Shown piece after piece: positions 1,114 to 63,742 of a DNA stretch of 64,000 bases (the stretch's first letter is position 1; the number at the start of each line of letters is the position of its first letter). The DNA is from Trichosphaerium sp. ATCC 40318 (taxonomy: Eukaryota; Protista; Tubulinea), in NCBI GenBank assembly GCA_038496445.1, contig JALMLS010000305.1, positions 1 through 64,000 on the forward strand. The letters run 5' to 3'. The position numbers were made by a program, and so were the translations under genes. The notes beneath the pieces were generated by a model. It was not told the DNA's origin. It saw only the letters and a program-made list of their open reading frames with translations, and searched no databases.

Positions 1114-4030
1114 ATGTCCATCGTACGAAACACATCCAAGCGGTACACAGTGAGTTTTTTTGTTGGTGCTAAAATGAGGTGTAGAAAGCGAGTTTCAAGA
1201 TCCAACTCCCCCAAAACACGATCGAAAAAACCACGCATACAAGATCTAAAGGTAACGTGTCAAGTAGATGATATAAACTCCAAGGTACGGTGACATGTTT
1301 TATTATAAACGTCAAAATCTTAATTATTTTCTTCAGACAGCAAATGCAAAGAACCGCGATCAATTTACAATACAAAGAGACAAGATTAAAAATGCTATCA
1401 TTAATCTCAAAAGTTTATTAGAAGTTACAGTGGCAAATGGAGGCGCGAAAATATTAGAAGAGCCATGGGCAAAAAATTAAACTTAAAAGCAACGTTATTG
1501 TCCAAAACACATACAGAGTGGATAGTACAAAGTGTGTTGCCTGCAAATATAAAATCGCCAACTGCAAACACAGTAAAAAAGCTTAATCAGGTACGAGAAG
1601 TCTCTTTACATCAAGCTTTTCTTATTTTTTTCCAATACAGGTGAAACGTAAAGCTGAGAAGCACAATATATCTGGTGCTGCCTTGGTGCGTATGGCTTTG
1701 ATTGTACGAAACAAAAGGCAACAAGGTAAGCATATATTACCAATCAACAACTTATTGTTATTGTAGCTAACAAAAGGCGTTCTGTTGTTCCTTATGGCAC
1801 GTTAAAATCGAGCATTATGCCAAAAGATATAACCATGGCATTTGATTATCTCAAGTGCAACACAATGCCTACTTTAACTCATTTTCAAGAAGGTACAGAT
1901 AAAACAAATACAATGACACGATTACCCTCTAATGTATTATACAAGAGAATGAAGAAACAGCTCACGACAACATTAAAAGTGTTACTATCAAAAACACTTT
2001 TAATTCTACAAAGCTGAATATAGATTGGAGAGGATCTGTATCACAATTGTGGCTTACAACATATGTTATACCTGACGAACTGTTGTTTGTGTGTAGACAA
2101 TTTGCTGGACAATTCAAAAATGATCTCAAACACACGGTACACAAATCCATTGTCTTAACCACGTGTTTACTTTGTTAGTTTTGGTCTAAGCCCGGTGATT
2201 TGTGGGAAGCAAACATTATGAGGAGGTATAAGACCCAAAATTATGGTAAAGTTGTTTGTGTTACCCCATATTCTGGTAAGTTGCTTATTTGTTTGGTATC
2301 GTGATTAACATCAACCATAAAGATAAGTTTTGTGGCAACTCTGAGGTTAAGATACCCATTCAACTAAATGAAGCCAAGTGAAATCAATTATTGCCTATTA
2401 TAAATGCTCATCACAACATTACAACCAACACAAAAGCTTTAAATGACAGTGAAATTGCGGACATGGTCATAGAGTTAAAGGTGAGTTTATACAAAAAAAT
2501 GGTGTTTGCAATGGTTAAATGTAGTTGTTTATAGGAGTGGCTTACAGGCAAATCAAGCTTAAGAATGCATAGTGATGGAGACAAAGGCCAATTGCATAGC
2601 GGCTCTGGTATAACATGTTTTGGTTTTGCTTTGAAGGATGGTAAAAAAGAAAAACTTGATAAAACCATAATCATTCAAACAAGCACGTGCTTTATATTTA
2701 TTTTGTAGTATGGTAATATTTACTTTAGATTCTGAAAAGTTTAAGGTTAATGGCACTAACTTTGTGTGGGCCTTAAGCAACATTGACCCTCCATCAGCTG
2801 ATGTCCAAAATGATGGCGATGGATTTGGTCCAGGGGTAGTGCGACATTCTGTTGAAGTTGTGGTGCCTAAAGGAGTCCGTTACTTTTCTTTAATTGTTAG
2901 ACATTTCATTCGGACTCTGCCTGAAATAAGTGACCTTGCTATTGCAAAACAGAAGCGTTTGGTGGGGTTGTCTTCCAAAAGCTATGCTAAACACACCAAA
3001 TTGAAACACTCTCTATATGTTTGTCCACAAAACCTGCGCTATAAAGCCAACAACCACTTTCTTCTATCTTCTTCTTATAAATTACCTCAAGATGATGATA
3101 AAGAAACAATCATACACCCTGGAACTCTGTTAATTTACAATTTACCTGGGTGCGTTTATTTGTAATTGCATAGTTGATTTAATATTCTTTTCAAGCTTGT
3201 GTGAAATGGGTTTGATTGCTTCTTATCAAAGAACTTTTCAAGGACATACAGGAGTAGGATTAAAAGTGGTAGTTAAAAAAGAGTGTGTTGCCAAAGAGTA
3301 CATCAAGACTTTACTCAGTTACATTTAATGTTATTGCAGATATTTTTCAAGTGATTGGGCGGTTGTATACTCTACTGCAACAGAAATATCTCAAGATAAT
3401 GTTAGTGCGCTCATTAAAAAGTCACTGTATTTGCAACGGAATGTCGACAATGAAGATGAAGGTTGTACTTTTTTTATAACCCCCTGCACTCTATTAAAAC
3501 AACATGTTGATGTTGATTATGATTCACTGGGCTGTACGAGCTTGACATAGACTTATGTTTTGTTGACATTGTATTGTAGGCGCCCGTCAACTTGGAATTG
3601 TGTCAAGGTGGTATGTTCATGGCTTTCTTTATTATGGAAAACAGCCTGTTGTGGTTTTTAGAAAAATCAAACGGCTAGGAAATAATCTCTCTCTTCACCT
3701 CAATTGCAAGTGCTGCACACTGCGTCCATTATTCTTGAATATATTTAGTGATGTACCTTCTGACAAGAACATGTCTGATGAAGATATAATAACTAAAGAA
3801 AGTTTTCATTGGAATACAATCAAACAATTAGATGGTACGATTTTTTTTTTTGCAACTTTTTTTTCTAATGCTCCTTTTATTACAGTATTACCCACACTAG
3901 TAAATCAGTTTGCTTACACCGGAAAGCTATCCAAAGAAGACAAAAGAAAATGTGATTGTACGTTGGTTGTAAGAGTATTAAACGTCTAAATTGTTTTATA
4001 GGTTTAGATAAATTGTGTAGGAAACAATAA
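1114..4030 (+). CDS. Multi-exon hypothetical protein, transposon accessory ORF 1
   Basis: Chain of plus-strand exons bounded by GT..AG (track ORFs 1295, 1817, 2710, 3600); last exon reads CDCLDKLCRKQ*. No family recognised; start approximate. Confidence 0.55.
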
Positions 4031-11640: not shown

Positions 11641-11945
11641 TGTCCAAAAGTATTTTTCTACAATTAACCTGTAAGTTATTGACAGCACTGTAACCAAAAA
11701 CAGCATAACCAACAACCATTTTGCTGCACATTGCATACCAACAACTTTTTTACTTGTCTACACAGCTAGAAGTTTGTGCTCATAAAGTTTAACAAAGTTT
11801 AAGACAAGTTAATGTACAATTCCAAGCTCATCTTAGTGGTTACTTCTCAATCAAAACACTTGAAACAATAGCAGCTTATTATTTAGGTGCTTTAGTTTAG
11901 GATGTATATGATAAATGATAAATAATTATGTTTATTCTATTGAAG

Positions 11946-14900
11946 CTAACTATCATCACTACCAGAACTATCTGAAGAAAAGTCATCATCGTCATCTGCT
12001 GGCTCAAAATCTGAGTCTTCTTCTTTTTCATACATAGTCCTCCTTGATACAATACCTCTTGTTATTAATTCTACATCCCCACTCTCTGGTGTGTGGTAAC
12101 CACGGTCGCTTCCTGCTTCCACATCACGTTTGGGTGTACCAGCAGCTAATACATAACGTTAAATCATCACAAAAGAGCAAAGAATTCAAATTGTTTGCAA
12201 AGACATACACAGAACTTCAGAGTGCAACACAAATAGTTTGCGGTTTGATTTGTATGGTACAACTTGGGTGTCTGCCTGCACTTCGACTTGAAATCTCTTT
12301 GTAGGCGGCTTCAAATATTTTTGTAGGTACACATTCTTCAACTTGATTTTGCAGTTTGGAATATTATGAGGTAGATCCGCCTACATTATTTGGTTTGTTA
12401 GAAGTGCAAACTTTGAATGCAAGTATGTACCAATACACCATATTTATGTATACGAGCATAACGCCTTCTAATCCAAATATAAAATAGGACTGTTAACACC
12501 ATGCAGGTAATTACAATGGCACCATAAGGGAACTACGCAGAAGTGTCAGGAACAAAAAAGCTAATTGGTTTTTGGGTTTTTTGGGAGGCGTACACTGTTA
12601 GCTGCAAATACGCCAATGAGCGTTAGCTGATACATTATCAAACCAACAATAATTAAAGTCCAAGCTGTCAAAAATTGTGCACCACCACCTGTAAAAACGC
12701 AAAATATTAGGATCGGAACATATTGCCTTTCTTTTTTGTAGCAGAACAACATACCTTCGAATGGTTGCTTCATCGCCCACATAACATTGTATTTATCGGC
12801 CAATAATGAGAACACAAAGTACAACATGCCAAATGGTAGAATAAGTGGCGCCATTGTAGAGTACACCATAATGATGAGTAGCGTTGTAAGCGCATGAGCG
12901 TACCTGTAACAAGATCGTTAAAAAACCCAGAAAACCAAAAACACCACTTACTTTTCGGCATACTCAAAAGCGCCAGGAAACCAAATATCACGTTTTTCGC
13001 GCTTAGTCTTTGCTAGGAAATCCGTGATAACAGCGACAACTAAATCTATAGGTCTCCACAAATCAAGCGTTGGTGCAGCAATACCTAACCAAAAGTGTTT
13101 AGAGAAAGATAGCTGGGAAAAATAAGCTAACCTTCTACTATGATATAGTTTATGAAGAAGGTTGCTTGTTGAGGTAAGGACGATGCTAGTAATGTAATGA
13201 TTTGCTCAGGTCTACGTCGTATCTTCTCAATAACCTTGAGGATTGCACCAGCGATTGTTGATACCAGAAAGACATTGAATACAAGGAAAATGAAAAACTT
13301 GACCATCACGGATCTAACAAAAAGAGGTAACCATTAGCTCTGAATGATATCAAAATAAAAGGAAAAAGACAGTACGTTTCAGCTTCTGAGCGAGTAAATT
13401 GTTGTTGCATTTTTGTCAAAAAACGAAGTATAGGCACAAGGATAGCCATAAATACAATCAAAACAAGGGCAGGCAAGAAACCTAAGCAACGTTAGAGGCA
13501 ATAAATGGTCACAACTAAAAAGTGAGAGTGCCTTCTAAAAAGCCCTTAATAACTGCAGGCAGATCGGATTCTAACCACTCTAAACCACGTGTATTTGCTA
13601 GAGTCTCGAGATTTGATAATGTTTGTACAAAACCGACTGGTATTGTCCAAAAGAAGATGAGCAAGAAGCAAAGTCCGGCTACAATAAGAGATCTAAATAT
13701 TTGTGCATTTCTGGTTGTGTCCAAATGCATCCAAATGATGTCCCTAGTCGCAGGTTATTTATGGAACACAACAAAGGAAAGAATAAATAGTAGATTACTT
13801 CAGTTCTGGTGCACGGGTTACTTTCCAATCGCGATTGATTTCTGATTGAGAGCACTTTACAGCTTCTCCAATTGTCTAAATAATCAGTTACGCTTTTGGC
13901 CTGAAGAACGAAAGTCCACTTACATTTAATGTTGCGAATGCAACGCCCGTGTCTTTACAATACTTGTCCGCTTTGCCCATTTTCTTTATGAGTTTCTTGT
14001 CTGCTTTTTTTAACGCCTTGACATGGTGATCTGAAGTCATGTCAGCTTGCAAATTTTGATTACCAATATTTATAATAGTGTACCGATGGCATCTTTTCCA
14101 TCTGTAAGCTTCACAACATCTTTAACATTCTTAGCAATATCCTTTATCTTCTTTATGAGCTTAGGTCTTTCTCCGTGTTTGTTTTTAGCCCATATAGCTA
14201 AGTACTAAGCATGGTAAGGAGTAATTACTTGGCTCGTGCAGCACGCACTTTCTCGATTTCTTCGACTTCTCCTATGCGATGCTGGTGTGCATCACGCAAT
14301 TTATTAAGCTCTTGAACACGGTGGACCTCAATGACTCTATTATTGTACAGCGGGTTCAGGTAATCCATGATCTCTTGATCTGTGAAACTGGGGATATCTT
14401 TGGAACCTAAGTTCAATGGTAAGGGTTTACTTATTTATCATAGCAAGGTGGACAATAATACGTACCGAGTAGATTAGAGAATGTAGTGAGACCTTTTCCA
14501 CCAAGTGCTGCAACGTTGGAAAGACCAGTTGGAGACTTTGAACTTGCTCTATCCATTACACTTGTGCCGCGCTTTTTAGGGTAAAGAATCAGCAAGACGT
14601 GTTTAAGACAATCCAAGTGCGCACCTTTGCCACGTTTTTCATACCCTTTGCTGTAAAATCTGTCACCTTGTCCATACCTGGCAAAAGTGCGAGAGCTTTT
14701 AACGGATCAATTGGTATATCTCGTATCATGACAGTGTAATTTTCAGCGAAATGTTCCTGTCCCAAGTAATGGAATCGCTTGTGCAAGAAGTTTTCATAGA
14801 ACGCTTTTAAAACCCATAATGTCACGAAAGTGTTGTATATCACACCCACCATATGGAACCACAAGAAATTGGAGCCGTTTGGAATATTTGCCATGGTAAT

Positions 14901-17199
14901 CTCATCAATACCTTCGAAAATGAGTCAGTTGTTGATGAAGGACTTTCTTGCTTCTACTTACCTGTAACGAAGAACGCATTGTCTTCTGGTAAAGATGCGT
15001 TAGAGCCAGCGAATACTATAAATATAATTAGTTTGTTTGTTTCTTTTACCACTCATTTCTATTCTGTAGCGTACTGTTGACCATAATGAGTACTATACAG
15101 CCGTACACTGCATACAAAAATACAAGTTTGAGTGATGTTTGAAGGAATTTAATGTACACCCAGGCATCTAGCCCATGGTACTTGTAGATATCCTCATTAG
15201 AAACCTTAATCGTGGCAAATATCCATTGATACCAACCTGGTGGAGGGTGGTCTGGAAGTGGGGCACGCCTAGTCACGGTTGTTAATAATTTTAAAAAACA
15301 GCTAACGTCGTTACGCACTTTTTGTAGTACGGCTCCCAAATTGTGCAGTTAGCCTCGTAAAATTGTCTTAGGTAAGGAATCGTTTTTGAAATCACAAAGA
15401 GTCCAACAAACAGAAGAGCAAGACCAATGTTGATAAAGAAGGTTGTTACAATACCAACAACATCAGATGACACTAGCGCGCTCAAGTAAGATAAAACTAC
15501 CTCAAGACTATGTTCATACCTTCGAGCGGTGTGGCTCTAGAGTTCACAGATTGAACTCGAAAATTGTAGGTGTCCATAATGTAAGTAAAGTTATCTTCAG
15601 GATCGTCAACTATGCCAAGAGGCTGTCTGAATTCCTAGCCTTATGTTATTTCAAAAAAACACAAAAAGGTTTTTTTTGCTTTACGCTAGTACCTTGTCTC
15701 CTCCACCAACATCACCATAACCGCCACGTGTATCACCGTTTTTATCAAAAATTTGGATAACATTTTCAGTCAACAGTCTATCAGTGACATACAAAAACTG
15801 TTGGTCTTGGTTTGCGGTCAAATATACTGGAGACGTAAAAAATTCTCCAGATCCCAATGAACCAGATACATCAAGCTGTCCCACAGTTCTAATTATGGAT
15901 CCTATACAATTTTAGACCTTTGGGTGCAAACTAACCAATTTGTGCGTTTTAATGACTCATTAACAACAAATCATTCATATCAAAAATGAACGGAAGCTTT
16001 TACGCACCTGTGTTATTTGATATGTCCCAATACTGTAACCTTTGGCCACCTACGTCAACAGACACTACGAACGCTGACTCCTCTAAAAATGCAATGCCAA
16101 TTGGGTATTGCATTTGATCTGTCAAAACAGTCAAAATGGCGTAACAAAAAAAAATGGAAAAAAAAATACCACGTGCCTCTGCTAATGCCGTACTCTCCAA
16201 ACGCAAATTTAAATGATCCATCGCGCTCAAGCACCTGGATCCTGTTGTTTCCAGTATCGGATACGAACAAGTACGGTTGAGTCAAATCATTTGATGCCGC
16301 TATGCCCTGACGCATATTAAAAACGGTTTAACGAATGACAATGATCAGACGCTTTTATGGCGGTTGCTAAAACCCGAAAAGCTGCTAAATGTGCAAAAAA
16401 AGATTATAGTACCCTGGGGCTATTAAATTGTCGTGGACCACTGCCTAGCTCTCCAAACAGAGCTAATCTGGCGCCTGAGATTCATTTTAGCGAAAAAGAT
16501 CCAATACGACAGTGGAGTTTTTACACAAAGCCAAAATATAATCCAAATAAAATAATCACTGTAATAGTACCATTAATGCCAAGTGCCACGACGATGCGGT
16601 GATTAAACGTGTCACAGATATATATGGTGGACGTGGTGTTAGTGTACGTTGCTGCAATGCCAGAGGGGTGTTTAAATTCAAAGGAGCCACTACCGAGTTG
16701 TCCAAACGAGAACTTAAAACCACCTTTTGTGGTAGGTTGGTTAAAAAAAAAACAAACAAAAAAAAAAAACAGAGTTATGAGGTTTGATGACGCGTACCAG
16801 AAGTGTCAAAAACTTGTACGCGGTGATTGGTACTGTCAGTGATTGCAAGGCTGATCAAGACAGTTAATTTTGTGGTTTTTACATTAGTTTAAATGGCGCA
16901 AAACGGAAAAACGCATTGTAAAGACGTACAATGATATAGTATCGTTTGCTTCTTCGTCAAAGTCTCTGTAAAACGCGATTCCGGTGCTGCCCTCCGAAAA
17001 CGTTCCCGGTGTGTTGCCCTGCGAGCCAAAGTTTTCGTTGTGTTCGTAGTCCTGGGCTAAACGCCATTAGTGCTTTGAAATTTAACACACGAGTCTCTAC
17101 GGCGTGCTACCGCATACGCCGTGTTTAAGACTTACCTATTGCGTTGGGTAACCATAATAGCAAGCTGGCGATAAGAACAAGCCTGTACGTGCTATACAT
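11946..17199 (-). CDS. OSCA/TMEM63 (CSC1/RSN1-type) mechanosensitive channel with N-terminal signal peptide and six NHL repeats; multi-exon
   Basis: Channel motifs MANIPNGSNFLWFH, NYTVMIRDIP, FFWTIPVGFVQTLSNL, LASSLPQQATFFINYI, YSTMAPLILPFG. NHL motifs HPSGIA..IYICDTFNHRI and LFVSDTGNNRIQV. The two parts join in frame across a 47-nt GT-AG intron at 15473-15519. Confidence 0.85.
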
Positions 17200-17543
17200 T
17201 GGGTAGTGATCACGCACTTGTTGGGAACACCGTAAGTGCTTTATGTAGCCTTTCTCACAGTGCCACTATCAAAATTATAATCGAATAATTTGAAAACTAA
17301 TCGGCAAACTTAACTGGAACGGTACGAACTCCGACAAACATGTTCTGTGTTATTATAAACGTTATTGAGCATGCTAAGACGTTGGTTGGTGATGGTACAT
17401 TTTCTCGTACACTTTGCCTAATTGGTTTTATCTTGTGGGTGTATTCTTAGACTGTACGCTAAAATCATATAGGCGTATACGAGAAATACGAATAACAGAA
17501 TGATATAAAACTTAGAAAAAAAAGAACTGTACAGTGATTCAAC

Positions 17544-34058: not shown

Positions 34059-35326
34059 ATGTTTCAAGTTGCTTTTGTCGCTCCAAAATCTCGATTAGAC
34101 GTTCTAAACGACGTCATTGATTATTTAGATAAGCATGGAAGGTACTGATATTGTCTAAAAGGCTCTGTTGTGAAAATTATTTAGAACACTCGGGTTTGGC
34201 GTTACGCGTATAGAAAAAGCATCAGTGTTGCGTGATACTTCTCTATTGTCAATTAGTGAGACTAGAAACTACGATTTAATGTTTTTACACTTACGCAATG
34301 AAATCGCTATCGCACATGAACAAGAACAATCCAAATCAAAGGAAGATGAGGTAATAGAGAATTTCTCGCTCAACACTTGTTTCAATTTCAGCGAACTACC
34401 CACTTGGATAACTGTGTTTTTGGGCTTCCCTCGCGTAGTAATTGTTTTTTCGAGTTGTGGCATTGCGTCTGGTTATAGGTTTACGCCCATTCGAAACTAA
34501 AAACAGACATTTCTTATCAACGCTTTTTTACGCCATTTTCTTAAGAGTACGTGACTAACGCATGTACTAGAACGCTAAACAAGCAATAAAACTTTTAGAA
34601 TGTGTAAAAAAGCTTGAAGACATACCAAAACCAAAAGACGCACTGCCATGGCTAGTAGATACTATACAGCTACAAACACACGTATCTTTAAGGACAACAA
34701 TGCTCGCAATGATACAAAAAATAACACAACGTGTCAACGAAAAGCACGATAACTTGATGTCACCTAAATCATTCGAGATTTCAAATGGTAATATAGATTC
34801 ACTACCAAAAGATGCACGATATCCTCTTCTTGCAAAGCCACAATCAGGTGAGAATCATCAAATTTCTGTCATCTTTAATAGGAAGGACATGTTATCTTTT
34901 ATCAACGAAAACAAGAACACAACAGTACTAACTCAAGTGTATTCCCCTCACGACTCTTATATGGTTAAACTATTCTCTATTGATGGACATGCAGTACCCG
35001 TTTATCGTACGTCAATCCCAAGATTTGCTGTTGGAGAAAGTGAAACACCTCGATTCGACTTTGTTACTTTAGACTATTGTGGGAAGGTCCTAGATAGCGA
35101 TACGGTATCAGGAGTAACTCAAATGCCTGATCACATAATAGACACTATATCGAAGGTAGCCAAGGACGTTCTTGGCGCTTGTATGTTAGAAATGGACGTC
35201 ATTTATGACGTTGTTGAGAAACGATGGGTAATTGTTGATTTAAATCACTTTCCTAGCTATAACGGCGCACCAAGGGAATGGATAAAGCAGAGAATGCTTG
35301 AATTCATCACACAGTATATTAAATAA
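34059..35326 (+). CDS. ATP-grasp inositol 1,3,4-trisphosphate 5/6-kinase (ITPK1)-like protein
   Basis: YPLLAKP, HQISVIFN, QVYSPHDSYMVKLF, RTSIP, EMDVI..WVIVDLNHFPSY; 5' exons approximate. Confidence 0.75.
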
Positions 35327-54306: not shown

Positions 54307-55641
54307 ATGCTACGTTCTTCAAAGTATGTCTTCTGCCTACGTCTTAGGCTGTTTATCGCTCAATTAAGCAGAAACCCGTTTTATTGCACTGATACTATTC
54401 ATAGGCCGTTGGTATTGCTTTGGCTACCGACAGAAATTATATTTTGTATACTGGCGTTATTAGACAAGAAATGCCGTTTATCAGCAACGTTTGTTTGTAA
54501 ACTGTTCTCTACAATCATTTTAAAGCACTTGGGGTATTTAACAGTGAACGTCAAGTCAAGAGAAAGTCTGTTCAAACTACATGAAAGTCCTCTTTTAAAA
54601 AATACACAAGTGATTATTGATGGTTTTACAATGACTGAAGATGACTTTAAAAATCTATCTGGTGTTCATCACCTTGAAATAAACATAATTATGTCATTAT
54701 CAAATGCAATGCTAGAACATATTTCAGGTATACATCATCTGAAAGTGCACTTATCAAAAAGTGACTGTAGTTTCAAATCACTTCATGGTATTCATACACT
54801 AATTACAGCAGGGTATTTTACAGATACATGGCTTCAAGAAATTGGTAGCATCCATACAATCAATATTTCAGGGACAAATATAACAGATAAAGGACTTGCG
54901 GCACTCTCTGGAGTTCATACTATTAACTTATCTAATTGTGACAATATCACTGACAAAGGTGTCATTGCCATTTCAGGTAATGTACACAAGATACAGCTGA
55001 ATAGATGTGATATTACAGATAAAAGCGTAAAAGTACTAACAAATGCAAGTTTCATATCTTGTTATGGCTGCAAAAAAATTACAGATGAAGGAGTAAAGTA
55101 TCTGTTAACAAAAAATCAAACAACTCACAAAATTAAAAAAATTGTACTAGATGACTGCACTCTAATATCAAACAACGTCTTGAAACTTTTGGCTGGTATA
55201 CCTTGTATAGAGGTTTGTAATTGTATACAACTAAAAGATGATACTTTATCATGTTTGGCAGGTGTACAGCATATTGATTTGAATGGTTGTACTTCAGTAA
55301 CAAATGACGGGATAAAACAATTGGCAGGTGTAAAAGTGATTGATATTTCTTATCTTGACTGTGTTGATGATAGTACTTTAAAGGCACTTGCTGGAGTACA
55401 TACAATCATGCTTGATGGTACACATATGACAGATGAAGGTTTAGGATACTTAGTGGGTGTCAAATTCATAAGCCTTCATTATTGTGAAAAGATAACAGAC
55501 AAAGGAGTGAGCAGTCTTATTGGTGCTAAGACAACTGGTCTACAACACTGCTCTCAAATCACAAAGACGATGATTAACTATCTAGGATGCAACATATTTA
55601 ACACAAACTTTTGGCCTGTTTTTGACCACACTTGCAGATGA
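54307..55641 (+). CDS. F-box/leucine-rich repeat protein
   Basis: F-box LLWLPTEIIFCILALLD..SATFVCKLF; ~21-22-aa repeats such as VHTINLSNCDNITDKGVIAISG; a short 5' intron is possible. Confidence 0.9.
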   Translation: MLRSSKYVFCLRLRLFIAQLSRNPFYCTDTIHRPLVLLWLPTEIIFCILALLDKKCRLSATFVCKLFSTIILKHLGYLTVNVKSRESLFKLHESPLLKNTQVIIDGFTMTEDDFKNLSGVHHLEINIIMSLSNAMLEHISGIHHLKVHLSKSDCSFKSLHGIHTLITAGYFTDTWLQEIGSIHTINISGTNITDKGLAALSGVHTINLSNCDNITDKGVIAISGNVHKIQLNRCDITDKSVKVLTNASFISCYGCKKITDEGVKYLLTKNQTTHKIKKIVLDDCTLISNNVLKLLAGIPCIEVCNCIQLKDDTLSCLAGVQHIDLNGCTSVTNDGIKQLAGVKVIDISYLDCVDDSTLKALAGVHTIMLDGTHMTDEGLGYLVGVKFISLHYCEKITDKGVSSLIGAKTTGLQHCSQITKTMINYLGCNIFNTNFWPVFDHTCR

Positions 55642-61149: not shown

Positions 61150-63742
61150 TTACCAATCAATCTTGAGAGGATAGTCGCCTGTGAAACAAGCGCTACAGTG
61201 TCCAGTAGACTCTAAAGAACAACTGTTATGCCAAAAAAAACTGAAGAAAGAAAAACAATGTAGTACCTGATGTTTCGAGGCCTTCACGGACAGCCTTTAG
61301 CATACCGTCATGAGATAAGTAACCAAGAGAATCAGCGCCAATATGTTTAGCTATTTCATCGATTGTTTTGGTGTGAGCGATGAGTTCCTTAAAGATTATT
61401 CAGCGAACACAAAAAGTAAACGTGACTAATGGTTTCATGTCCATACCTCCTTCTCTGAGATAGCAATACCCATGAAACATGGGTTTGTTACTGGAGGACT
61501 TGAAATACGAACATGTACTGATTTTGCACCTGCTGAACGTAATAACCGACATAGTTTGTTCAAGGTGTTTCCTAAAGTTAAACATCAAAAAAAAAATCCA
61601 AAAACCACAAAACTTCGCAGTACCTCTCACAATTGAGTCATCGATGACAATAATATCTCTTCCCTTTAGATTAGATACTAGTGGATTGTATTTAAGAGAT
61701 ATAGCATTCTTACGAAGCTCTTGACCAGGCTATAAAATAACAAACGTTACTTATAATTTTTTTTTGTATTGTACGCTTACTTGAATAAATGTACGACCAA
61801 TGTATCTGTTTTTACATAAACCTTCGTTGTACATGATACCTGTTTTTGCTGCATATCCGATAGCAGCTGGAATTGACGAATCAGGAACGCCCATAACCAT
61901 CTAAAGAAAGAGTAAGATGCTAAAGTCATCTTTTACAATTTCATAGAAAATAAAATATTGTTTGATTCATAAGGGCGTACCGATACTCCTTTTGGTGGTG
62001 GATGTTCAATAGCGAGCTGTATACCAAGTCTTTGTCTTACTGTATGTACAAGCTGATTTTCTAGAATTGAATCTGGTCGTGAAAAATAAACATATTCAAA
62101 AATGCAGAATGCTGTTTTCTTTGCAGGCTCTCTTCCAACAAATGACTTCAATCCTAATAAAAACAATCTCTTAGCATGCAAAAATAAAATGAATACCACA
62201 GGCAACAGCCTCAAAACAAAAGCAGCTACATGACACAAGAGAGCTTCGCATCGCGAAATGGTTTTTTGATTCTTTGAAAAGTTCAAATTGAATGCAAGTC
62301 TTTTGTCATTGAGCGTACCTGAGCTGTCTATTTTGAGTATTTCTCCTGGCCTGACCTCTCTTACATACTCAGCGCCTACAGTTTGAATAGCACAAGACTC
62401 TGAAGCAACAATGTAGCCTGCATCTTCAGGTAGACGCCCAATACATAGCGGTCTTAGACCATACATATCACGGGCTGCGTATACGGCATCTTTAGTCAGA
62501 ACAACGAGTGCGTAGGCACCTGGAGGTTGTGTTACTGTTTTAAATGTCTCGCAGGGCATGCACTACGGACCATCTGACTCATGCATCAAGGCAGAGATAC
62601 GTGATACCCAGTCAGGACCGTCCTTCTCTTTGTCTGGGATTGGTAAAGCCAACAGTTGCGCCATGACCTCAGAATCCGAGTTACGGAACATACCTAAGTA
62701 GAGGTTAATTAATACATACATAAGAACAAGATTTAAAGTAGTAACAGTCGAGGTTTTGCTACGTAAGAAACAAGGGAAAAAATTTTCTTTGAATGTTTTT
62801 CCGATACTCTTATCCCGCTATGACGTACCAACACCTCTGTTTAGTAGCTTTTTCCTTAGTACATCTCCTTTTGTCAACTATAGTATAGTTATAAGCGTTT
62901 TAAAGCGAAAAATACGCAAATCAAACAAACTGATGTGACATTTCTTATTTATGGATTAAGAATTTTCCATTGACGTACTTGGCCATTATGAGCTACACCA
63001 ATACGTCCCCAGTTTGTTTCGATCAAAAAAGGTTGACAATTTTCAAGGTTAGAAGCACCGAAAGTTGAATATCTCACGTGTCCAATTGCGTGGTTACCAA
63101 GCAAGTTCTTCATCTTATCTTCTGTAAATACCTTGATACAGAGCGTGAGTTTAAATAGGGAAAGGTTGTAGGCCAATATTATGGTTTGAATCGAAATGAT
63201 AGCGAAAATACGTTTTGGCGTAGCAAAAGGGTTTTTTGAGTTGGGTGGAGCGTAGTTTAGGTATTTAAAACGAGTTTACGTAAAAAGAAGCCCGAGAAAC
63301 AAAAAAGGGGCGAGATCTCGAATAAAATAATACGAAGAGTGGAATTGCCGGTTGCTTGTGTTTTATGGCCACAAACAAGAGTTTGTCGGGCAATTCTTTG
63401 GTATTACTCGATTTTTCTTTAAAAAGTGCTTGAACGCTTTTTTACGCGTTATACCTGTGATACAAGTCCCATTCCGCGTTCGTAAAACATTTCGTCATGG
63501 TGTTGTGACGCAATGCCGGCACTTTCTTGTCCTCTATGCTGTAACGCATAGAGAGCGAAAAAGGTAAGCCTAGCAGCATCTGTATTGTTCGTGTACACTC
63601 TACAAAATAAAACGTGTTAAAAACTTCTGATTATCGTTGCTAGCCCTTTTGAGCATTACCCGAAAACGCCACACTCATCTTGCGGTTTGTCTTCGTCTGT
63701 ATAGTTGATAGTTGGCTTTCTATGTATTTTTACAGACATCAT
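61150..63742 (-). CDS. PPAT: Amidophosphoribosyltransferase (glutamine PRPP amidotransferase)
   Basis: Propeptide then ECGVFG; GHVRYST; AHNG; RDMYGLRPL; [13 protein letters not shown]; VPDS; IDDSIVRG; [10 protein letters not shown]. Confidence 0.95.

What the first reader, a model, noticed from the sequence alone, without database searches (positions are those of the whole stretch)
11946..17199. Six-bladed NHL beta-propeller ectodomain fused in frame to an OSCA/TMEM63 mechanosensitive channel
Seen: on the minus strand, a signal peptide (MYSTYRLVLIASLLLWLPNAIA, ATG 17199) is followed by six NHL repeats (e.g. FKHPSGIAA..IYICDTFNHRI; LFVSDTGNNRIQV; EFRQPLGIVDD..TYIMDTYNFRVQ). The last NHL exon ends ...TPLE at a phase-1 GTATG donor (15519). 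The TAG acceptor at 15473 continues in frame into VSSDVVGIVTTFFINIGLALLFV, the first TM helix of the OSCA channel. The channel has no in-frame ATG or promoter space of its own. Established: six NHL repeats close one propeller, and OSCA/TMEM63 channels normally have only a few extracellular residues before TM0 and are gated by membrane tension. Inference: the signal peptide places the propeller outside the cell or in a lumen, suggesting a tethered or ligand/adhesion-gated OSCA. I do not know of this architecture having been described.
Basis: partly seen in the sequence, partly recalled or inferred. Interest (0 to 1): 0.9.

Follow-up and report, generated by a model that had tools for sequence, protein, structure and literature searches.

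The report
OSCA channel with extracellular NHL propeller
A marine amoeba makes one spliced mRNA for a stretch/osmotic-stress channel of the OSCA/TMEM63 family that carries a signal peptide and a six-bladed NHL beta-propeller on its outer end. I found this domain combination in no paper or protein library, and it could allow a test of whether such channels can be gated from outside the membrane.

Summary
A 27-exon minus-strand gene (ATG 17199, stop 11946-11948, 1210 aa) encodes four parts in order:
- a signal peptide
- six NHL blades
- an 8-residue linker
- a complete OSCA/TMEM63 module starting at TM0

The 47-nt junction intron (15519..15473) is spliced out in transcript contigs of three RNA libraries. 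One 3702-nt contig matches my 26-intron model to the base and starts with a template-switch oligo at 17286. It is therefore one mRNA from its cDNA 5' end to within 38 nt of the stop.

A diverged relative on a metagenome contig (L001) has the same signal peptide, six blades and in-frame junction (ATPLE-G-SSDVV). It shares 53% identity in the propeller and 66% in TM0-TM1.

An exhaustive HMMER search of 1.84 billion representative proteins found no full-length relative. Four literature searches found no NHL-OSCA/TMEM63 report. A direct query by domain architecture was not possible with these tools.

The scan noted a second NHL-OSCA gene elsewhere in this genome (s1-372645); I did not test it.

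Shown: the gene, its mRNA, its conservation, and family membership of both halves. Inferred: extracellular or luminal position of the propeller. Untested: any gating role.

Verdict: a real, expressed, conserved new variant of a known channel family.

The parts
17200..17286 (-). 5' UTR (87 nt, no upstream ATG); cDNA 5' end at 17286
   Evidence: The X3 contig continues beyond 17286 into the reverse complement of a SMART template-switch oligo plus GGGG (table 7). Sequence read.
17136..17199 (-). Exon 1: start codon and signal peptide (MYSTYRLVLIASLLLWLPNAIA, predicted cut after A-I-A)
   Evidence: L001 has an exon 1 of identical length (64 nt) encoding MVFRSYLSGAFLLLLLPFAVVG.
15520..17056 (-). 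Exons 2-9 with introns 2-8: six NHL blades (residues about 29-341, 35 kDa, pI 4.5)
   Evidence: Weak per-exon Pfam NHL hits. Exon 4 against the PDB: Thin E 2.6e-24, TRIM71 E 6.8e-18, NHLRC2, TRIM2/3, Brat. Blade list and pI. Splice joints in RNA contigs.
16119..16176 (-). Intron 6, a GC-AG intron (AG|GCACGT...GACAG)
   Evidence: Only a GC donor keeps the frame. The joint 16118->16177 with ends CT..GC is seen in X1-X4.
15473..15519 (-). Intron 9, the junction intron: 47 nt, GT-AG, phase 1, joining the last NHL blade to TM0
   Evidence: The joint 15472->15520 (skips 47, CT..AC on the + strand) is in contigs of X1, X3 and X4. Same position and phase in L001 (2978..3039, GC-AG).
15319..15472 (-). 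Exon 10: linker end plus TM0 of the OSCA module (SSDVVGIVTTFFINIGLALLFVGLFVISK...)
   Evidence: RSN1_TM profile positions 2-36. Aligns with TM0 of canonical OSCAs. 66% identical to L001, same exon length of 154 nt.
11946..15268 (-). Exons 11-27: TM1-TM2, the roughly 250-aa cytosolic domain, TM3-TM10 and an acidic C-tail; stop codon at 11946-11948
   Evidence: RSN1_TM 46-153 and RSN1_7TM 1-245, collinear. OSCA profile match to residues 348-1115, E 7e-180. PDB hits to OSCA3.1/ERD4, OSCA1.1/1.2 and TMEM63. Joints.
13482..13531 (-). Intron 19, second GC-AG intron (AG|GCACTC...GCTTAG)
   Evidence: A joint skipping 50 nt at 13480->13531 (position free within 3 bases) is in X1-X4.

Best explanation
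This is one gene for one membrane protein of 1210 residues.

Architecture:
- A cleavable signal peptide sends the N-terminus across the membrane.
- A 35-kDa, acidic, probably N-glycosylated six-bladed NHL beta-propeller follows.
- Only about 8 residues (SRATPLEV) separate the propeller from TM0 of a complete OSCA/TMEM63-type channel module (11 TM helices plus the cytosolic domain).
- The N-terminus of OSCA/TMEM63 proteins is extracellular or luminal, so the propeller must sit directly on the outer mouth of the channel.

Shown: the gene structure, the single spliced mRNA, the family membership of both halves, and conservation of the fusion in a second species.

Inferred, about 85%: the propeller lies outside the cell or in the lumen of an organelle.

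Inferred, about 40%: the propeller binds an extracellular partner, such as the amoeba's own cell coat, a prey or substrate surface, or a soluble ligand. Through the short rigid link to TM0, or by capping the pore mouth as the small N-terminal domain of hTMEM63A does, it would modulate or drive gating. That would add tether or ligand control to a channel family otherwise gated by membrane tension.
For: Gene model:
- 27 exons and 26 introns of 44-106 nt form one ORF.
- The 15472->15520 joint and 14 other listed joints match the model in X1, X3 and X4; 10 more joints were not displayed.
- The X3 contig length of 3702 equals 87 nt of 5'UTR, 3595 nt of spliced CDS and a 20-nt template-switch oligo.
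- There is no in-frame Met for a separate channel before residue 455.

Family membership:
- OSCA: collinear RSN1_TM and RSN1_7TM hits; profile match to residues 348-1115 at E 7e-180; PDB hits to OSCA and TMEM63 structures.
- NHL: exon 4 hits solved six-bladed NHL propellers down to E 2.6e-24; six blades listed.

Conservation:
- L001 has a signal peptide, six blades and an in-frame phase-1 junction.
- Five of its first ten exons have lengths identical to the window's.
- Identity is 53% in the propeller and 66% in TM0-TM1.

Topology:
- AxA and VxG signal-peptide cleavage motifs are present.
- The sequons at N59 and N110 are conserved in L001.
- K/R-rich sequence follows TM0.
- In hTMEM63A an N-terminal soluble domain extending from M0 shields the extracellular pore mouth (PMC10319725).
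Against: - No functional data exist: channel activity, subcellular location, glycosylation and any ligand are all untested.
- The RNA evidence comes from assembled contigs, not raw reads, so isoform proportions and rare intron retention cannot be judged.
- No structure model could be made, because the spliced protein has no reference.
- OSCA/TMEM63 proteins also act in endomembranes, so the propeller may face a lumen rather than the outside.
- The propeller might serve only sorting, assembly or anchoring, without touching gating.
Confidence: 0.85

Rival explanations
1. Two neighbouring genes, a secreted NHL protein and an OSCA channel, are joined only in read-through or chimeric transcripts or by assembler artefact. 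The real products would be separate.
For: Contigs across two genes do not by themselves prove a single transcript (caveat printed). Retaining the intron would give a secreted NHL protein ending EGMNIVLR*.
Against: - The junction intron is precisely removed in three libraries from two studies.
- The contig length fits one mRNA from its cDNA 5' end.
- The channel part has no start codon before TM1.
- Only 47 nt separate the two parts, leaving no room for a promoter.
- A relative with 53-66% protein identity keeps the same phase-1 junction and the ATPLE/SSDVV flanks.
Confidence: 0.03
2. The fusion is real, but the propeller does not gate the channel. It would anchor or sort the channel, for example to the cell coat, to a membrane domain or to an organelle, or protect its outer face. 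Gating would remain purely by membrane tension.
For: - OSCA/TMEM63 channels are gated by membrane tension without accessory domains, and a 2026 review (PMC13494684) describes their architecture as conserved.
- The propeller evolves faster than the channel: 53% against 66% identity.
Against: The linker is only about 8 residues, so the propeller cannot be far from the pore mouth. Even the small N-terminal domain of hTMEM63A contacts the M1-M2 and M3-M4 linkers and was proposed to lower conductance.
Confidence: 0.3
3. The membrane module works mainly as a lipid scramblase or has another non-channel role, as has been reported for some members of the TMEM16/OSCA/TMC superfamily. The propeller would then be its extracellular or luminal sensor.
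For: Superfamily precedent, from my own knowledge and not tested here. An Anoctamin Pfam hit appears on a related OSCA.
Against: The sequence matches the channel-type OSCA/TMEM63 families end to end. No evidence specific to scrambling was found.
Confidence: 0.08
4. The precursor is cleaved in the linker, releasing a soluble NHL protein and leaving an ordinary OSCA channel.
For: None directly. This is only a general possibility for type-I-like ectodomains.
Against: The 8-residue linker (SRATPLEV in the window, SEATPLEG in L001) has no dibasic or other recognisable processing site. Conservation of the exact junction suggests a structural link.
Confidence: 0.04

Closest known systems
OSCA/TMEM63 mechanosensitive cation channels (Arabidopsis OSCA1.1/1.2, OSCA3.1/ERD4; human TMEM63A/B/C)
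   Same: The whole membrane and cytosolic module is shared: RSN1_TM, the cytosolic domain and RSN1_7TM, collinear from TM0 to TM10. Solved OSCA3.1, OSCA1.x and TMEM63 structures are the best PDB matches.
   Different: Canonical members start within about 10-30 residues of TM0 (RSN1_TM begins at residue 9, 15 or 28 in P0012, P0034 and P0014). This protein has a signal peptide and a 320-residue propeller before TM0. It groups with neither the plant nor the animal branch: the best PDB hit differs from exon to exon.
N-terminal soluble domain of human TMEM63A
   Same: It is an extracellular segment extending from M0 that sits over the outer pore mouth (PMC10319725). This is the same attachment point as the propeller.
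   Different: In TMEM63A it is a short segment with no recognised fold family. Here it is a complete six-bladed NHL propeller with its own signal peptide.
Six-bladed NHL propellers (Drosophila Thin/TRIM32, TRIM71, TRIM2/3, Brat, NHLRC2)
   Same: The repeat signature and blade number match. One blade matches several blades of these structures, with E down to 2.6e-24.
   Different: Those are cytosolic RNA- or protein-binding domains at the C-terminus of soluble proteins. This one is secretory-pathway, acidic (pI 4.5), N-terminal and fused to a channel. Extracellular NHL propellers such as those of teneurins and the PAL enzyme are known to me from memory only and were not compared here.
Monosiga brevicollis OSCA-like protein MONBRDRAFT_22418 (P0008)
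   Same: It is an OSCA-family protein with a signal-peptide-like start and a 192-residue extension before TM0. N-terminal ectodomains on this scaffold therefore occur elsewhere.
   Different: Its extension is Cys-rich, matches no Pfam family and is not NHL.
Tethered mechanotransduction channels of the same superfamily (TMC1/2 complex of hair cells)
   Same: This is a functional analogy only: a TMEM16/OSCA/TMC-superfamily pore coupled to an extracellular structure (my own knowledge).
   Different: In TMC complexes the extracellular link is supplied by separate proteins. Here a candidate binding domain is part of the channel polypeptide, and coupling is unproven.

Membership tests
OSCA/TMEM63 (CSC1/RSN1) channel family | N-terminal three-helix module (Pfam RSN1_TM, TM0-TM2) | tested here: met
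   Exons 10, 11 and 13 hit profile positions 2-36, 46-104 (E 2.4e-14) and 120-153, in order.
OSCA/TMEM63 (CSC1/RSN1) channel family | Cytosolic domain between TM2 and TM3 (Pfam PHM7_cyt) | tested here: inconclusive
   No Pfam PHM7_cyt hit on single exons. However, a profile of 13 full-length OSCAs aligns straight through residues 510-760 in one domain, and the YTVMIRDIP and TGVAFATLN motifs align with homologues.
OSCA/TMEM63 (CSC1/RSN1) channel family | Pore-forming 7TM region (Pfam RSN1_7TM) | tested here: met
   Exons 19-23 hit profile positions 1-57, 56-89, 91-149 (E 3.6e-19), 155-195 and 198-245, in order. Hydropathy shows the remaining helices.
OSCA/TMEM63 (CSC1/RSN1) channel family | Mechanically or osmotically activated cation conductance | not testable with these tools
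   Needs electrophysiology.
NHL-repeat six-bladed beta-propeller | NHL repeat signature in sequence | tested here: met
   Per-exon Pfam NHL hits are each below the 20-bit cut-off (17.1, 15.6 and 12.5 bits) because introns split the blades. Exon 4 alone hits solved NHL propellers at E 2.6e-24 to 1e-5.
NHL-repeat six-bladed beta-propeller | Six consecutive blades able to close one propeller | tested here: met
   Six repeats of 50-57 residues with the G..G..F..P.GI...D..N.R[IV]Q motif cover residues 29-341. The same six are in L001. Ring closure itself was not modelled.
NHL-repeat six-bladed beta-propeller | Propeller fold in three dimensions | not tested
Secretory or type-I-like ectodomain topology | Cleavable signal peptide and luminal or extracellular marks | tested here: inconclusive
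   Both species have a hydrophobic N-terminus with a small-x-small cleavage motif. Two N-x-S/T sequons are conserved in position, and basic residues follow TM0. No dedicated signal-peptide predictor or experiment was available.

The most novel reading that the evidence does not exclude
This would be the first natural OSCA/TMEM63-superfamily channel with a built-in extracellular receptor domain. The propeller would bind the amoeba's cell coat, a substrate or a ligand. Through its 8-residue link to TM0 it would gate the pore by force-from-tether or by ligand binding, rather than by bilayer tension alone.
Probability: 0.3. Interest if true: 0.8.

Novelty: new variant of a known kind. Interest (0 to 1): 0.6.

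Why it matters
OSCA/TMEM63 channels are regarded as pure membrane-tension sensors with a strongly conserved architecture (review PMC13494684). How extracellular structures might couple to this superfamily is studied mainly in the multi-protein TMC complex.

A natural single-chain fusion of a binding-type propeller to TM0, held on the pore mouth by a very short linker, gives a simple two-construct experiment: full-length against propeller-deleted protein. This asks whether the outer face and TM0 can transmit gating force or ligand signals in this fold.

It also points to how a coated marine amoeba may sense contact or osmotic and mechanical load. If the propeller turns out to be only an anchor, the finding remains a documented new domain combination in a little-studied lineage.

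Tried and rejected
Searches that found nothing:
- Two scans of JGI metagenome contigs with alignments of exon 10 and exon 23 found no relative.
- Two scans of IMG/VR viral contigs, prompted by the many giant-virus-derived genes reported for this amoeba, found none.
- The search for homologous proteins with an OSCA-plus-window-exon alignment returned only 4 hits, none with NHL. With an exon 11 alignment it returned none. The word index is weak for this query, so these blanks say little.
- An ESM Atlas feature search with exon 13 gave only ordinary OSCA-type clusters, none with NHL.
- A tblastn search of the model against the rest of the window found no second copy here.

Relatives checked for extra domains:
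- P0002 sits just after a PI3K gene on its contig, with no room for a propeller.
- Capsaspora P0034 starts canonically.
- P0003 and P0005 are not on record as genes.

Alternative splice choices rejected: GT donors near 16176 and 13531 break the frame or create a stop. GC donors are required, and RNA confirms them.

Rejected: a catalytic, PAL-type role for the propeller. This rests only on the scarcity of His residues and was not formally tested.

Left out: AlphaFold modelling, a full-protein Pfam scan and a whole-length database search.
Full report
**Observation.** I read 11700-17500 on the minus strand and translated all three frames. From these I assembled a gene model from explicit donor and acceptor contexts.
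- The model has 27 exons and 26 introns of 44-106 nt (median 58).
- It runs from ATG 17199 to a stop at 11946-11948 and encodes 1210 residues.
- Every coordinate in the finding holds. The signal peptide starts at 17199. The last NHL exon ends ...ATPLE plus one base at 15520. The intron is 15519..15473 (47 nt, GT-AG, phase 1). Exon 10 continues (V)SSDVVGIVTTFFINIGLALLFV.
- Retaining the intron would end the protein at ...TPLEGMNIVLR*.
- Two introns need GC donors (16176..16119 and 13531..13482).

**Family identity of the two halves.**
- Translated exon by exon, Pfam RSN1_TM matches exons 10, 11 and 13 at profile positions 2-36, 46-104 and 120-153.
- RSN1_7TM matches exons 19-23 at positions 1-57, 56-89, 91-149, 155-195 and 198-245. 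The order is strictly collinear.
It aligns to residues 348-1115 of the model as a single domain (E 7e-180). Residues 1-347 lie outside it.
- Solved structures matched by single exons are OSCA3.1/ERD4, OSCA1.1/1.2 and TMEM63 proteins.
- On the other side, NHL Pfam hits per exon are individually below threshold, because introns cut the blades.
- Even so, the 50-residue exon 4 alone matches six-bladed NHL propellers in the PDB: Thin at E 2.6e-24, TRIM71 at 6.8e-18, and also NHLRC2, TRIM2/3 and Brat.
- Six blades of 50-57 residues cover residues 29-341.

**One mRNA.** Four public runs hold the locus. I laid them on 11700-17500.
- Transcript contigs of X1 (3490 nt), X3 (3702 nt) and X4 show the joint 15472->15520, skipping exactly 47 nt with GT..AG ends on the minus strand.
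- Fourteen other listed joints equal my introns, including both GC-AG introns. Ten more joints were not displayed.
- The X3 contig runs past 17286 into the reverse complement of a SMART template-switch oligo plus GGGG. This marks a cDNA 5' end 87 nt upstream of the ATG.
- The spliced length from 17286 to 11984 is 3682 nt. Adding 20 nt of oligo gives 3702, exactly the contig length. This validates all 26 introns.
- X1 dates from 2015, and X3 and X4 from 2023, so two separate studies agree.
- The channel part has no in-frame Met until residue 455, inside TM1. Only 47 nt separate it from the NHL exon.
- Caveat: these are assembled contigs, so minor isoforms cannot be excluded.

**Conservation.** An exhaustive HMMER search with the 95-residue exon 13 against 1.84 billion representative proteins gave one close relative. 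It is a 79-residue fragment at 65% identity (P0001).
- Its contig, L001 (14 kb, from an ENA metagenome assembly, GC 46% against 37% here), carries the whole gene.
- I rebuilt its first 11 exons from the sequence. They encode a signal peptide (MVFRSYLSGAFLLLLLPFAVVG), six NHL blades, then ...EATPLE-G-SSDVVSVVTTFF... across a phase-1 GC-AG intron (2978..3039).
- Exons 1, 2, 3, 5 and 10 have exactly the same lengths as in the window. One intron has moved.
- Identity is 53% over the propeller and 66% over TM0-TM1.
- Two N-glycosylation sequons (N59 and N110 in the window) are conserved in position.
- Both propellers are acidic, with pI 4.5 and 4.2.
- The fusion therefore predates the split of two clearly diverged species, and both halves are under constraint.

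**Topology and likely mechanism.** The propeller most likely faces the outside or an organelle lumen, on four grounds:
- both species have a signal peptide with a small-x-small cleavage motif
- two sequons are conserved in position
- K/R-rich sequence follows TM0

Only about 8 residues link the last blade to TM0, so the propeller must sit on the outer mouth of the channel. My best reading is a tension-sensitive OSCA-type channel whose outer face is occupied by a binding-type propeller. That propeller may cap the pore or transmit pull from an extracellular partner to TM0. The fusion itself is shown. The orientation is a strong inference. The gating role is a hypothesis, at about 40%. An anchoring or sorting role without gating is the main rival.

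**What is known.**
- Four full-text searches returned no paper on such a fusion. The term sets were TMEM63+NHL, OSCA+TMEM63+domain architecture+propeller, OSCA+NHL repeat, and RSN1_7TM+NHL.
- A 2026 review stresses that the family's architecture is remarkably conserved (PMC13494684).
- Other top hits of the HMMER search are ordinary OSCAs, such as the Capsaspora protein, whose RSN1_TM starts at residue 15.
- The one exception is a Monosiga brevicollis protein with an unrelated 192-residue Cys-rich extension before TM0.
- JGI metagenomes and IMG/VR gave nothing.
- I could not run a true domain-architecture query, so novelty is 'not found', not 'proven absent'.

**Organism.**
- Earlier follow-up notes of this scan name the genome as the marine amoeba Trichosphaerium.
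- The window's GC (37.0%) fits the published draft genome, as do the short, dense introns. That genome has GC 37.69%, a mean intron of 75 bp and a mean exon of 154 bp (PMC10521059).
- The paper's single-cell transcriptomes would explain the SMART oligo in the 2023 runs.
- I treat the name as probable, not verified.
- The scan also noted a second NHL-OSCA gene on another piece of this genome (s1-372645). I could not inspect it.

**Limits.** I therefore left out structure prediction, a whole-protein Pfam scan and whole-length database searches.

Noticed in passing
window 16119-16176 and 13482-13531 (minus strand); L001 2978-3039: GC-AG introns with the donor context AG|GCAC occur 2 times in 26 in this gene. 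One also sits at the junction intron of the L001 ortholog. Both window cases are confirmed by RNA joints. GC donors may be unusually frequent in this lineage.
   Followed up: partly
window 14505 (minus strand, inside exon 14): An X4 contig ends at 14505 in the same SMART template-switch oligo. This is either a truncated cDNA or an internal 5' end. It lies far downstream of TM0-TM2 and so does not mark a start for a separate channel.
   Followed up: no
window 12285-16223: The RNA contigs of X1, X3 and X4 share about ten substitutions relative to the window, for example 12285 G>A, 12303 A>G and 13608 G>A. The cause may be a strain or allele difference, or transcripts of a near-identical second copy.
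   Followed up: no
L001 2826-2899 versus window 15635-15692: One intron in the sixth NHL blade differs in position between the two species. It falls after GGGDK in the window and after PLGIAAG in L001. The other nine compared introns are at the same sites.
   Followed up: partly
P0008 residues 1-192 (Monosiga brevicollis MONBRDRAFT_22418): This choanoflagellate OSCA-family protein has a signal-peptide-like start and a Cys-rich 192-residue extension before TM0 with no Pfam match. It is a second, independent case of an N-terminal ectodomain on this scaffold.
   Followed up: partly
window 54307-55641 (+), 34700-35326 (+), 61933-62559 (-): Long ORFs elsewhere in the window include a 444-aa F-box plus LRR protein, an exon of an inositol-trisphosphate 5/6-kinase-like gene, and an exon with a glutamine amidotransferase (GATase_7) match.
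   Followed up: no
L001 11221-11400 (minus strand): A short called ORF downstream of the L001 ortholog carries a weak thrombospondin type 3 repeat hit.
   Followed up: no
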